Below, in pieces: positions 12,001 to 18,000 of a stretch of DNA of 64,000 nt. Each line of letters begins with the position of its first letter. Position 1 is the stretch's first letter. The notes beneath the pieces are model-generated. The model saw only the letters and a list, made by a program, of their open reading frames with translations, made no database searches and was not told the origin of the DNA. Made by a program: the position numbers and the translations under genes. This DNA is from Macrostomum hystrix (lineage: Eukaryota; Animalia; Platyhelminthes): positions 806,001-870,000 of the forward strand of contig CATNEN010000011.1 of NCBI GenBank assembly GCA_950097015.1. Reading direction: 5' to 3'.

Positions 12001-15000
12001 ATTTATTACAAACAATGCATTTTTACATTGTCATTGGTTGTCGGTGGTTGTTGTGCCTAAATTTTGTGTAAGAACAAATTAGTTTGAACAGAATAATCAA
12101 GTACATTAATTCCATTATAGTTCGGAAGAAATTGCTTATTACGTAAGATTTTTGACGTTCAGAATGCTAGTAAAATACGAACTAGATAAAACAAGCTAAA
12201 AAGTAAAATATTTATTGATTGCATCTGCCTCGATCGGGACAATTGAGATCGGACCAGCAGTCCATGCTCCACAGTCCAACCAGGGATTTTTAGCCTAGCG
12301 GTTCGCAAGTTGGACTCACAACTTGAAGGTCGGGGGTTCTATTCCTAAATCCAATGGTACAAATTTGTGTCAATTAACAAGACACCTAACTTTGTATTGC
12401 TTCAGTTCACCTAGCTGCTAAATGAGTGCCATGGACTTCAGTCCATAGACTTAACAGCTAAACAGCCTTCACATGCGCCAGGCAATAGCTGTGGCTGTGC
12501 TGCACATCTGGCTCAATTGAGGTGGTTGAAATAAAAAATAGCATGAGGTTCAGCTCGCTGGCTATTATCTCGATGCAGGTGCGTGGCCTCCATTCGCGAC
12601 AAAACTGCAATTGCATCTGATTCTAATGGCTGCGGACCGCTGTTCTTGACTTAGTTGCAGGGTGTGTCCAACCGGCGGATGCAGCGAGGAGGCGGAGGAA
12701 CCGCCCATTTCGCTAACCGCTGGCGAGCCTACCGCTGTTCAGTCCATGGACTGGAGTGGTGCTACATCCACCCTCAACTACCCCAGCTAAAGTTGGTGCC
12801 TATTTAACAGCTGGGTGAACTAAAGCAATGCAGAGTTAGGTGTCTTGCTAATAGGCACAAATCGTTCCAGTGGAGTCAAGAATCGAACCCCCGACCTTCA
12901 AGTCGTGAGTTTGAATCTCTAACCATTAAGCTACAGCCCGTTCTCGTAGCTGATTTTATCTTATTTTACCCAATAACTTCACATTAAAATTCACTCAAGT
13001 CGCGAGTCCGACGCACTACCAGAAGTTAGTAGTTCTGGTGCGCTAACCGTTGGACTATAACCCCCCTAAGACTGGTTGGACTGTTGACTATGGACTACGG
13101 TAAAGACGGTCTCTAAGTGCGAAGTCTCAAGCTAAAATACTACGTCGGTAAACTAAGTGTCAAACGCGATTCCAAATGAAGAGAAATGCGGGATCGATGC
13201 CGGGGTGTCCCCAAGTGGGGGTGTGGAGGCGAAGGCCCCAGGAGAGGATTAGCTGTGATGAGATTTACGGCCGGCGTAACGTGGCAGCCGGGAATGTACA
13301 CTGGATGGGGGTGTCGGGGCAAGCCCCAGCTGTTCAGTCGTGGGCGCCACATCAACTCAAACTTCTGTTCCAGAGAATGATATTTTTATCTGGTTGAACT
13401 TAAGCAATTCGTCAATAGATCTATAGAGGAGACTATGTGCCTTACTTAATAATAAGCTATTAAAAATCAATGCATTCCGTCCAAGAGTTTGTTTTTAAAA
13501 GTTGTAACTGCTTGGTAACAGAGCTTTTAACATTGACAAAACTAGACTTTAGTATGGTATTGGTGTTAAATCAAGGAGTTCGTTTCTTGTCTATAAAAGC
13601 AACAAAAATTATTTGTTAAAATAGCCAGAGAATCTGCTGCTATCCAGCAAGACTAAAGGCGCCGCAGTTAAACTCGCTGATTTCGGTTTGGCCATCGAAT
13701 TGCAACCGGAGCTAGCTAATGATTGGTTTGGTGCGTTGCGATTGCTGCAAACTTGCTTATTAACATCAGAATGTTTATTTAACTATTTATGGGTGCATTT
13801 AATCGTACAACACATTACTTATTCTAAAAAAATTCAACAGCTAGATTAAAAGTTCATATTTATATTTAAGAAGCTAATAATATGTCAGTAAAGCCATTTT
13901 AACTAATTTAACTGAGAAGTGTAAGGTTTTAATTTTCAATATGGCAGCTAACCTCTAATGTAAGCATAATAAAAAATTGTTAACGCTATATAGCCTGAAA
14001 ATTGACTTAAATTGTACTTTAATTATACGGTAGTTAAAAGTCACTTTTAAACAAATAGAAAAATATCAGATAAACAATAAATTCGCTTGGTATTTTCTAA
14101 TACGTTTTACTCTATTTATTATCTGTTATTCTTCAAATACTATTTCAATACTGACACTACGCACTTAGTTACACAGCTTTGTGTACACATGTTATATTTT
14201 CTCTCTTGGTTATTGAGTGACTTTCTTTTGCGAGTGGTATTGTCGTTTCTTCGCTATCATTTTTTGCATTGTTTGCAGAGTGATATAACTATTTTACATA
14301 TCCGAAGGACCACAGCTCATAGAAAAATATATATCATTTTCAATTTTAGTGTCTAGAAGAAGGATAACGGGATAATTTGTCTAATACTACCAATAACCAA
14401 TAACTAATTGCTTCCTAGTAATCAAAAAAGTTTGATTACTCTAAACTATCGATAGAGTTTAAGTTTTAATGTGCCGAAGTGTAAAGTGCACAAAAAGAAA
14501 ATCTTTCTTACTATGGGTACGCTTCTACTTTTTTTTACAAAAATTCTTAAAACATACATTTGTTGTAACTGTCGCTGTTTATAGCCAACGGATGTAAAGT
14601 TATCTTTGGTGTATAAATACATATTGAATACATCATTAATAACATTCTTCAAAGGCAGTTATTGGTGTTTGCAAGAGCGCTTATGTTTTGATTTCAAAAT
14701 TCAAAATTTAGTATTATTATTTATAATACTAAGTTATTATTTAAGCTGAAATTTGGAGTTAGTTCGTTAAATTTTCTCGGCGCAAGCCAACTATAAAATT
14801 TGGTTAAATTAGAAAAGTTTTGATACTTTTTAAGTGGTTGTTTTTGCCTAATGTTCGTCCTTCAAAATATTTCGCTGAAGCATAAGCATCATGAAAATGT
14901 TTTTTTCTTACCTTATCTATAGAAAGTTTATGTTACGAGTGTATACCTTTTTCCGTCTTCCTACGTAAATATATACAAACTCAAGGCGGTCGCCTTAATT

Positions 15001-18000
15001 AAAGTCGGTATTCAGACTTATATGTTTTTCGCCTGATTCGGATGGTATTCGCCCCTTAATCGTATCTGCTTACCTGACATATTATACGACTTCTGGTATA
15101 TTTTCCAGGGGACTGCCTGTTACGTCCGATCTGTCGAATATAAAAAAAACATTTTTTGTTGCTGACATTTTTTTACTGAAATATGATTACCTGACGGAGC
15201 GAAAGAGAAAAACCTGTCGTCTTTTATTAATAAGATTCACGATTAAATGTGTATCTTTTATTTCTATATATACGGCATATTTACTATGCAAATTCAATTA
15301 CATTTTTATAGCCAGAGAATCTCCTTCTGGCCAGCAAGGCCAAGGGTGCCGCTGTAAAACTAGCCGATTTCGGCCTTGCTATTGAGGTTCAAGGCGAACA
15401 GGCGGCATGGTATGGTACGTTATCTAATTGGCATGAGTCCCAATCCCAGCTGCTACGGCGGTTTTCTGCTGCGGTTTTCTCTTGCGTGCCAACGGAGTTT
15501 TCTAAGCGGAATTTTTCTGTAACCTTGAAATTGGACATCGTCGTTTGGTTTTGTTTAGGAAAAATCCGAAGTAAATTAATCCTAAAAGCTGCATGCGTTC
15601 TTTAATTTTCCGAAATAACAAAAAGAAGCTAAGGTATGTAGCCGGGATGAGTTGCAACGAATAGTTTTGCCTAGTGAATTGAAAATAGGGTTGTTGGAAA
15701 GTATTAAAAGAGGGGAAAACGAGCAATGACTGTATGTTAAATATACTTTCTACAGATATACAATAAAGAAACTCCAGATTCACTGGAGTCCGCTAATACG
15801 TAGTTTAATTTTACTGACAAGCAGATAAATTTGGCAGTGGCATTAAAAAAGAAAATTGTATTTACTTTTTTTATTATTTATCGAGTGAACTATCCACTAG
15901 GAATGAAGTTTATGTTTTTCGTCCACGGGTAAAAATGTAATGTTTTTTATTCACATTGCCTGATTTGATTGTCATCATCAGGACTGCGTTGTTTGCACAA
16001 ACTATGTTATACCCATAGTTTATTACTTGTTGAAACCATTTAGCCTTCTATTGTAATTCTCGCTTCACTAAGGTATGGAACTTTTTTTCAAATTGCTCAA
16101 TTTTTCTTTTTCATAGTTGCTTGCTGTGAAGTAAAAATTAGTGTGATTTTATTTTAACCAAGAGTAAATAACAGTATAGTGAGTAAATAAGAGTACAGTG
16201 ATTTAAACTAGAACTCTAGAACTTGACTCATCAGGTCATAAAATCATCATGCAAGTTAAAATCAAGGATCATATCGTGTGCACTTACAGTAATCCTTAAA
16301 TAAATGTTTCCCTTCCATCGTAGCATTGTCGTCTGTCGTTATAAGCTTGTAAAAGCGTAAACTTTTTTTTCAAAGCATTGTCAGTACTTTAGCTCGAGTC
16401 AGATTTTTCTTTAGAACTTATCATTTTTCGATTATTTAGTTTTTTAACAGCATCAAGCGTTTTTTATTTTATTTTTAGTGAACTCAAAAAAACTTTATGG
16501 GTTCAAATCGTTGCTTTAGCCAACCCTAATATACATTTTTGGTTTCTTCCATTCCCGAGTTTTGACTAGTGACTTAGTGTTCTACTGATACAGCATTAAA
16601 CTTCCCTTTCCACTGTTTTGGTAAAATTGAAAGCGTCGTTATTTTTTAATATTAACAAATAGGGTAACTGAGACTTGAGTACGTTGAGATTTATGGTAGC
16701 TCTTTTCTGATAACAATGCTTAAGTGCAGTAAGCCAAGCTTTAGTTGGCTTTGTTTGTCTGAACCGATTAGCTCAGGATAGCTCAAGATTACGTAGTATT
16801 TGTACTCGTATTGGATGTTATATTTTGATCGATTTCTGTTGAATTCATAATTATAATACCAATTTTTAAACAACGAGCACAGTGGTTGCTTGAAATTTTA
16901 GAAAGCATCCAAATGCTTGCTCTTTTAATTGTGCCTTTGTATGGTTTATCTCGCATACATTTTTTGTCACTTTACTATTTACAAGCTTAGTGTAAATATG
17001 GATGTATGATTTTTTTGTTACAGTCCTTATAAACTGACTCGGAGTTTTTACAATAAGAATTCATAAAGTTGAAACTTTTATTATAAACTATTTGATATTT
17101 CAGGCTTTGCCGGAACGCCTGGCTACCTGTCGCCAGAGGTGCTGCGAAAGGACCCTTATGGCAAAGCGGTAGACGTATGGGCTTGTGGTAAGACATCTTT
17201 AAGATCCTCAGTTACAATAATATGGCGAGGGAAGGAAAGTTATTGCGAAGTTGCTGCTTTTTCGTGCGCAGTGTTTTGAGCAGAAATTGTAAATGTAAAA
17301 TAGGATTTAACTATAATAGCACTTCTTTGATTTTAGGTGTTATCCTGTACATTCTGCTTGTCGGTTATCCGCCATTTTGGGATGAAGAGCAGGCTAAGCT
17401 GTATGCTCAGATCAAAGCTGGCGCGTTCGATGTAAGCTATATTTTTTATTGTAGTATTTTATTTTTTTATTATGTTTTTTTTTATTTCCATAAATTCAAT
17501 GTCCACGATGAATCCATATGGTGAATTAAATGCTATATTTTCATGCCTTTGAGATTTTGGTTGTGAAAGCGTTGGTCCCTGGTTTTATCTGATCAGAAGA
17601 GAAATCAAGAAATGATAGAAATTAAATTTTACCCATTTTATATCGGCATTTTAGTACCCTTCGCCTGAATGGGACACAGTTACAGCAGAGGCGAAGAACC
17701 TTATCAACCAAATGCTAAACATAAATCCCGCGAAAAGGATCACTGCGGCGGAGGCTCTAAAGCACCCATGGATCTGCGTAAGCATTGTTTCTTAAATTAT
17801 ATACTCAAGAAGAATATATATTTTGGTTGAAATAAAGAACAAAACATACCAACATCAGCAGTTACTACGCATTAATATGTATGAGTATAGTATAGCCTTT
17901 ACTTTTATGTTTTCTGCCAGCCGTGTTAGATGATTACGGCACAAATGCTTGGCAGTGTGATTTCTCCTTTCAAACAAGTCGTGCAGTGTAGTGCTCTTTA

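What the first reader, a model, noticed from the sequence alone, without database searches (positions are those of the whole stretch)
13625..15414. CaMKII has two mutually exclusive exons for the DFG motif and activation segment
Seen: two homologous exons, both phase 0 to 1, so joint inclusion breaks the frame. They have many synonymous differences but conserved PENLLL and LADFGLAIE, which suggests purifying selection. 6b is canonical ([11 protein letters not shown]); 6a rewrites the loop ([12 protein letters not shown]: one extra residue, a Pro and an added Asp). Established: CaMKII diversity is mostly in the linker, and its activation segment has no phosphosite. From memory, human CAMK2D has alternative versions of exon 6, so this could be ancient or convergent (to verify). 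Inference: mixed holoenzymes with two catalytic specificities.
Basis: partly seen in the sequence, partly recalled or inferred. Interest (0 to 1): 0.72.

Follow-up and report, generated by a model that had tools for sequence, protein, structure and literature searches.

The report
Flatworm CaMKII duplicated DFG exon
A flatworm CaMKII gene holds two old copies of the exon for the DFG motif and the start of the activation loop; RNA uses the unusual copy as the main form, and use of the textbook-like copy is only inferred from its conservation.

Summary
Two homologous exons lie at 13625-13730 (6a, 106 nt) and 15312-15414 (6b, 103 nt). Both have AG/GT sites and the same phase. They sit in a true CaMKII gene: kinase, regulatory segment and hub are all in the window.

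Synonymous sites between the copies are saturated (pS about 0.8). The first 25 codons differ at only 3 residues (pN 0.054). The flanks do not align. So the duplication is old and both copies were kept by selection.

In all four runs laid, one spliced contig joins exon 5 > 6a > exon 7. So 6a is used and appears to be the main form. No contig joins 6b to exon 7. 6b is covered only at intron-level depth. Mutual exclusivity is therefore inferred from frame, conservation and intact sites. It is not shown.

The human/mouse CAMK2D "exon 6" pair is real, but it is the neighbouring HRD-loop exon. The flatworm pair matches human exon 7, so it arose independently.

No 6a-like exon and no second copy turned up in about 250 CaMKII exon sequences from other animals. 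All of those have an 11-residue DFG-to-W spacer; 6a has 12. Close relatives could not be searched.

The scan noted this stretch before on this same DNA. It is a new variant of a known kind.

The parts
6050..23564 (+). CaMKII gene as far as traced: the first coding exon near 6059 through the last hub exon near 23433-23540
   Evidence: exon translations covering the kinase domain, RQET...[10 protein letters not shown] and [14 protein letters not shown]; hub exon translations. Pfam CaMKII_AD (PF08332) positions 1-127 spread over four exon pieces.
10068..10140 (+). Exon 5 (73 nt, ...[14 protein letters not shown]), the constitutive donor exon. It corresponds to human exon 6.
   Evidence: splice sites tttttcag| and |gtaagt. 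The 30-letter loose end of the RNA contigs before 13623 is window 10109-10138.
13625..13730 (+). Exon 6a, the divergent copy (106 nt). It is the copy in the mRNA contig of all four runs.
   Evidence: joint 13729/30 > 17103/4 (GT..AG) in X1-X4, contig depth 44-66, no differing letters.
13731..15311 (+). Intron between the two copies (1581 nt)
   Evidence: no similarity between the flanks of the two exons; patchy low-depth coverage typical of unspliced RNA.
15312..15414 (+). Exon 6b, the canonical copy (103 nt, the same length and borders as human exon 7). It was not seen spliced.
   Evidence: covered only by contigs of depth 5-10 that run on into the intron. In X1 and X4 a contig starts exactly at 15311.
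17104..17187 (+). Exon 7 (84 nt, [11 protein letters not shown]...WACG), the constitutive acceptor exon
   Evidence: joints 13730>17104 and 17187>17337.

Best explanation
This is an old, lineage-restricted tandem duplication of the CaMKII exon that encodes the end of the catalytic loop (PEN), strands beta7-beta8, the DFG motif and the first third of the activation segment.

Shown: the upstream, divergent copy 6a is spliced exon 5 > 6a > exon 7, and it is the form found in whole-sample RNA.

Inferred: the canonical copy 6b is used in its place in a minority of cells, stages or conditions. Only single inclusion keeps the frame. Using both or neither shifts the frame and should lead to nonsense-mediated decay.

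Inferred: the swap leaves the catalytic Asn and the DFG unchanged. It changes two residues in the beta7-beta8 turn and rewrites the stretch between AIE and W, making it one residue longer and adding a Pro and an Asp. The expected effect is on the shape, regulation or docking of the activation loop, not on the chemistry.

How the choice between copies is made is unknown. Both copies carry the same weak donor, G|GTRCGT, while the constitutive exons mostly have GTAAG. That fits regulated exons.
For: Anatomy and phase.
CaMKII identity.
Age and selection: pS 0.78-0.81 (saturated) against pN 0.054 in the first 25 codons; flanks do not align. A copy left neutral since the duplication would be unrecognisable, yet 6b is still 32 of 34 identical to human CaMKII gamma.
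Use of 6a: one spliced contig per run, in four samples, with joints 10140>13625 (seen as a loose end) and 13730>17104.
RNA nature of the runs: GT..AG joints, exon contig depth 44-66 against intron contig depth 2-10, and A>G differences beside inverted repeats.
6b has an intact acceptor and donor.
Precedent: mammalian CAMK2D swaps the neighbouring kinase exon, with 6B at about 10% and only in the olfactory bulb (PMC12060085).
Against: No contig in any of the four runs joins 6b to exon 7 or to exon 5. 6b lies only in contigs at intron-level depth that read through its splice sites. Contigs drop rare variants, so this shows 6b is rare in these samples, not that it is absent.

All four runs come from one study, their library type is not on record, and depth comes from contigs, not reads.

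No orthologue of 6a was found, so selection on 6a rests on one pairwise comparison plus its expression.

No functional difference between the two forms has been tested.
Confidence: 0.6

Rival explanations
1. 6b is a recently retired relic. The lineage moved its CaMKII over to 6a, and the canonical copy is no longer spliced into mRNA.
For: No 6b junction in four runs, and 6b is covered only at intron level. 6a alone gives a complete reading frame.
Against: 6b keeps 32 of 34 residues of the canonical exon and both splice sites, although synonymous sites between the copies are saturated. With about 78 non-synonymous sites and at most two departures from canonical, any neutral period can only have been short, roughly under 0.1 substitution per site. 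That is my own estimate.
Confidence: 0.22
2. 6b acts mainly as a poison exon. Adding it after 6a shifts the frame and sends the mRNA to decay, which tunes the CaMKII level.
For: Including both exons breaks the frame. In X1 and X4 a contig starts exactly at 15311. That is the first base a 6a>6b junction would share with the genome, because 6a ends in G; an exon 5 junction would share from 15310. This is only a hint, because contig ends have other causes.
Against: A poison exon does not need a perfectly conserved coding sequence. No 13730>15312 joint is listed in any run.
Confidence: 0.08
3. Artefact: a misassembled allele or a fragment of a paralogue placed in tandem.
For: Flatworm genomes of this group are repeat-rich and partly duplicated (my own background knowledge, not tested here).
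Against: The copies differ at saturated synonymous sites and have unrelated flanks, so they are not alleles. Only this one exon is doubled. RNA contigs read without differences through 14933-16045 and across 6a.
Confidence: 0.03

Closest known systems
Mammalian CAMK2D exon 6A/6B (6v1/6v2) mutually exclusive pair (10.1101/721589; PMC12060085; PMC9741552)
   Same: Same gene family and same principle: a tandem-duplicated kinase-domain exon of equal length, with one or the other included. One copy is the default and the other is restricted (mouse 6B is about 10% of transcripts, and only in the olfactory bulb).
   Different: It is a different exon. The mammalian pair encodes HCIQQ...HRDLK (the alphaE helix and HRD loop, human exon 6). 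The flatworm pair encodes PEN...DFG...W (human exon 7). In mammals the default copy is the delta-typical one. Here the default is the copy that departs from every other CaMKII examined.
Other tandem-duplicated, mutually exclusive exons inside kinase domains, such as FYN exon 7A/7B (PMC9741552) and JNK exon 6a/6b (the JNK case is from memory)
   Same: Homologous exon swap that keeps the catalytic core and changes surface or regulatory elements.
   Different: Different kinases and different segments. Those cases have junction-level and functional evidence for both forms. Here only one form is seen.
Dscam1 / 14-3-3xi-type exon choice by docking-site and selector RNA pairing; earlier notes of this scan report it for multi-exon clusters in this genome
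   Same: Tandem homologous exons in a gene where only one can be kept.
   Different: No pairing signal above chance was found here. There are only two exons, and the 1581-nt intron between them rules out steric exclusion.

Membership tests
CaMKII | Ser/Thr kinase domain closest to CaMKII | tested here: met
   the top PDB hits are all CaMKII alpha, beta, gamma, delta or C. elegans UNC-43. Pkinase matches for the exon pieces.
CaMKII | Regulatory segment with the T286-type RQET site and the calmodulin-binding stretch with the TT pair | tested here: met
   exon translations [20 protein letters not shown] (18025-18105) and [14 protein letters not shown] (18205-18247).
CaMKII | C-terminal association (hub) domain | tested here: met
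   PF08332 positions 1-24, 24-55, 52-95 and 95-127 on four exon pieces between 22407 and 23564. Three of the four are above the curated cut-off.
Mutually exclusive tandem exon pair | Adjacent homologous exons of like length and the same phase, with their own splice sites | tested here: met
Mutually exclusive tandem exon pair | Each copy seen spliced to both constitutive neighbours | tested here: not met
   met for 6a in four runs. No 6b junction in any contig. Contigs cannot show absence, so the test is incomplete rather than failed for good.
Mutually exclusive tandem exon pair | The copies are never included together | tested here: inconclusive
   no 13730>15312 joint is listed. Joint inclusion breaks the frame. 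The contig starts at 15311 in X1 and X4 leave a doubt.
Mutually exclusive tandem exon pair | Both copies under purifying selection | tested here: met
   pS 0.78 and pN 0.054 over 25 codons; 6b is 32 of 34 identical to human gamma. Selection on 6a alone rests on this pairwise figure plus its expression.
Orthologue of the vertebrate CAMK2D exon 6A/6B pair | The same exon of the gene is duplicated | tested here: not met
   the paper's exon list shows the 6v1/6v2 pair ends in the HRDLK codons and that exon 7 is the 103-nt PENLL...WFG exon; the flatworm pair is the latter.
Docking/selector RNA-pairing exon choice | Complementary intronic sites beside the variable exons, above chance or conserved | tested here: not met
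   104 nine-base inverted seeds in 13400-17103 against 92 +/- 20 in shuffles, and no extended pair; the strongest duplexes are the SINE arms at 12260-12930. Conservation could not be tested.

The most novel reading that the evidence does not exclude
This flatworm builds most of its CaMKII with an activation segment found in no other CaMKII sampled: a 12-residue instead of 11-residue DFG-to-W spacer, with a Pro and an Asp. It keeps the canonical segment as a second exon for restricted use. That would make a natural two-state switch in a loop that needs no phosphorylation in CaMKII and is usually treated as invariant. If both forms are made in the same cell, it would also allow holoenzymes that mix the two catalytic subunits.
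Probability: 0.35. Interest if true: 0.65.

Novelty: new variant of a known kind. Interest (0 to 1): 0.45.

Why it matters
CaMKII isoform diversity is normally placed in the linker. The only kinase-domain exon swap described in the papers found here is the poorly understood CAMK2D exon 6 pair. An independent duplication of the next exon, in a distant animal, suggests that swapping kinase-core exons is a recurring way to tune CaMKII.

The DFG-to-W spacer was 11 residues in every other CaMKII exon examined (about 250). A naturally expressed 12-residue variant, sitting beside a conserved canonical copy, gives a matched pair for testing what this unphosphorylated activation loop contributes to activity, autoinhibition or docking.

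As it stands, the case is incomplete, because only one of the two forms has been seen in RNA.

Tried and rejected
1. Conservation of 6a by protein search. The 35-residue 6a peptide was run against 1.84 billion cluster representatives. The best single-stretch hits are canonical CaMKII exon fragments at 76-83% identity. The top 35 rows are unrelated repeat proteins. The 74-residue open frame over 6a was run in the word search, with the same result. Neither search can see a 6a isoform hidden inside a 50% cluster or in a full-length protein outside the length gate.

2. Metagenome scan (the first try failed because the query was too short; one search ran). It returned 80 loci. Together with L001-L002 from item 3, 82 loci were scanned. 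None is 6a-like, and the pattern QPELANDW gave nothing. 59 look genomic, and 44 of those have at least 2 kb on one side. None has a second copy. I did not work out which species these contigs come from and did nothing more with them.

3. I fetched contigs for fragments with single 6a-like or 6b-like features: AWYG, IELQ and VQP loops. They were too short or held a single copy, so they were uninformative.

4. RNA pairing as the choice mechanism: not above chance.

5. Steric exclusion is ruled out by the 1581-nt intron. U12/U2 incompatibility is ruled out because both donors are GT with no U12 consensus (read).

6. The search of earlier findings by sequence: blank.

7. Literature: no paper found on a CaMKII DFG-exon duplication or on exon swapping in Macrostomum.

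8. I did not verify it.

Full report
**Observation.** Exon 6a is 13625-13730 (106 nt) and exon 6b is 15312-15414 (103 nt). Each is preceded by ...tag and followed by gtgcgt or gtacgt. Each starts at phase 0 and ends one base into a Gly codon. Both begin PENLLL and contain [10 protein letters not shown]. After that, 6b continues VQGEQAAWY and 6a continues [10 protein letters not shown], one residue longer. Against solved structures both hit CaMKII first. 6b is 32 of 34 identical to human CaMKII gamma (E 4.5e-14). 6a is weaker (E 5e-9). Both match Pkinase profile positions 126-152 with equal score.

**The gene.** Reading the + strand gives a full CaMKII:
- a first coding exon near 6059;
- exon 2 at 8555-8707, which equals human exons 2 and 3 fused;
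- exons 3 to 5, with exon 5 ending ...HRDLK at 10140;
- the 6a/6b pair;
- exon 7 at 17104-17187 (FAGTPGY...);
- exons 8 to 11 with the RQET site and the calmodulin-binding stretch;
- four hub exons at 22407-23564 that together cover Pfam CaMKII_AD positions 1-127.

Only the one exon is doubled.

**Age and selection.** In the first 25 codons, 15 of 19.3 synonymous sites differ (pS 0.78, saturated) but only 3 of 55.7 non-synonymous sites differ (pN 0.054). In the loop part pN is 0.32. The flanks of the two exons align no better than unrelated sequence. The duplication is therefore old, and both copies were held by purifying selection for most of the time since. The amino-acid change is concentrated in eight loop residues of 6a.

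**RNA.** Laid on 12300-18280, they behave as RNA:
- they show GT..AG joints;
- the exon contig has depth 44-66 against 2-10 for intron contigs;
- they show A>G differences beside inverted repeats.

In every run a single contig joins 13730>17104, 17187>17337, 17431>17655, 17777>18025 and 18105>18205. The loose letters of these contigs before 13623 are window 10109-10138, the end of exon 5. So the main mRNA is exon 5 > 6a > exon 7.

No contig joins 6b to anything. In X2 and X3, 6b lies inside unspliced contigs (14933-15741 and 14965-16045). In X1 and X4 a contig starts exactly at 15311 and runs on into the intron. That start would fit a removed 6a>6b link, but it proves nothing.

An isoform as common as the 6a form should have broken the contig at the exon borders. 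It did not, so the 6b form is much rarer in these samples or absent. Caveats:
- contigs drop rare variants;
- depth is per contig;
- the tool silently filters human-like records;
- all four runs come from one study.

**Relatives.** None of the following found a 6a-like sequence:
- the 6a peptide against 1.84 billion cluster representatives;
- the 6a open frame in the word search;
- a metagenome scan.

All of the roughly 170 distinct exon fragments in the protein hits and all 82 loci have an 11-residue DFG-to-W spacer; 6a has 12. None of 59 genomic-looking loci has a second copy, and 44 of those have at least 2 kb on one side. This suggests the duplication is not widespread among animals. It says nothing about close flatworm relatives, which these collections do not visibly hold. 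The length gate also kept full-length proteins out of reach, because the exons may not be joined.

**Comparison with CAMK2D.** The exon list in 10.1101/721589 shows that this pair is the HCIQQ...HRDLK exon. The 103-nt PENLL...WFG exon is human exon 7. PMC12060085 shows mouse 6B in about 10% of transcripts and only in the olfactory bulb. PMC9741552 lists the event among tandem exon substitutions. The flatworm pair is the next exon downstream, so it is an independent duplication.

**Mechanism.**
- *Shown:* 6a is spliced in; single inclusion keeps the frame; double inclusion or double skipping breaks it.
- *Inferred:* 6b replaces 6a in a minority context. The argument is that a canonical coding sequence with intact sites has survived saturated synonymous divergence.
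- *Inferred:* the swap changes surface loops (the beta7-beta8 turn and the start of the activation loop) and not catalytic residues.
- *Choice mechanism:* unknown. Steric and U12 mechanisms do not apply, and RNA pairing is not above chance. Both copies share a weak G|GTRCGT donor, while the constitutive exons mostly have GTAAG.

**Verdict.** This is a real, old, expressed exon duplication in the CaMKII kinase core. It is a new variant of a known kind. Its status as a working mutually exclusive pair is probable (about 0.6) but not demonstrated. No letters from the human exon list in the paper were sent to any tool. The joined spliced model was not built, searched or folded.

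Noticed in passing
window 12379, 12380, 12404 (X2); 13094, 13097 (X1): A>G differences between RNA contigs and the genome. They cluster in or beside the arms of long inverted repeats (12259-12423 against 12802-13096). This looks like A-to-I editing of intronic double-stranded RNA, but each rests on one low-depth contig and no DNA from the same animals was available.
   Followed up: no
It appears to be a highly transcribed dispersed element.
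   Followed up: no
window 13731-13736 and 15415-15420: Both duplicated exons keep the same unusual donor, G|GTRCGT, although the rest of their flanks is unrelated. Exons 5, 7, 8 and 9 have GTAAG and exon 10 GTAAA. This may be a conserved weak site for regulation.
   Followed up: partly
window 8555-8707: Human CaMKII exons 2 and 3 form a single 153-nt exon here, which shifts exon numbers by one. The other kinase-domain intron positions that were checked match the human gene exactly, for example the 103-, 84-, 95- and 123-nt exons.
   Followed up: yes
protein hits P0036-P0224 and loci L003-L082: In about 250 CaMKII exon sequences from unidentified animals, the DFG-to-W spacer is always 11 residues, although its residues vary (for example QKDQES, TGEQAC, QPDQTA). 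The length of this stretch seems fixed in CaMKII.
   Followed up: partly
window 36100-50400 and 54000-60000: Very long tandem repeat arrays with strong strand skew give long open frames in several frames, for example units reading DEGIEWIASLAS or SSDFFRLLQT. They are satellite-like and not part of this gene.
   Followed up: no
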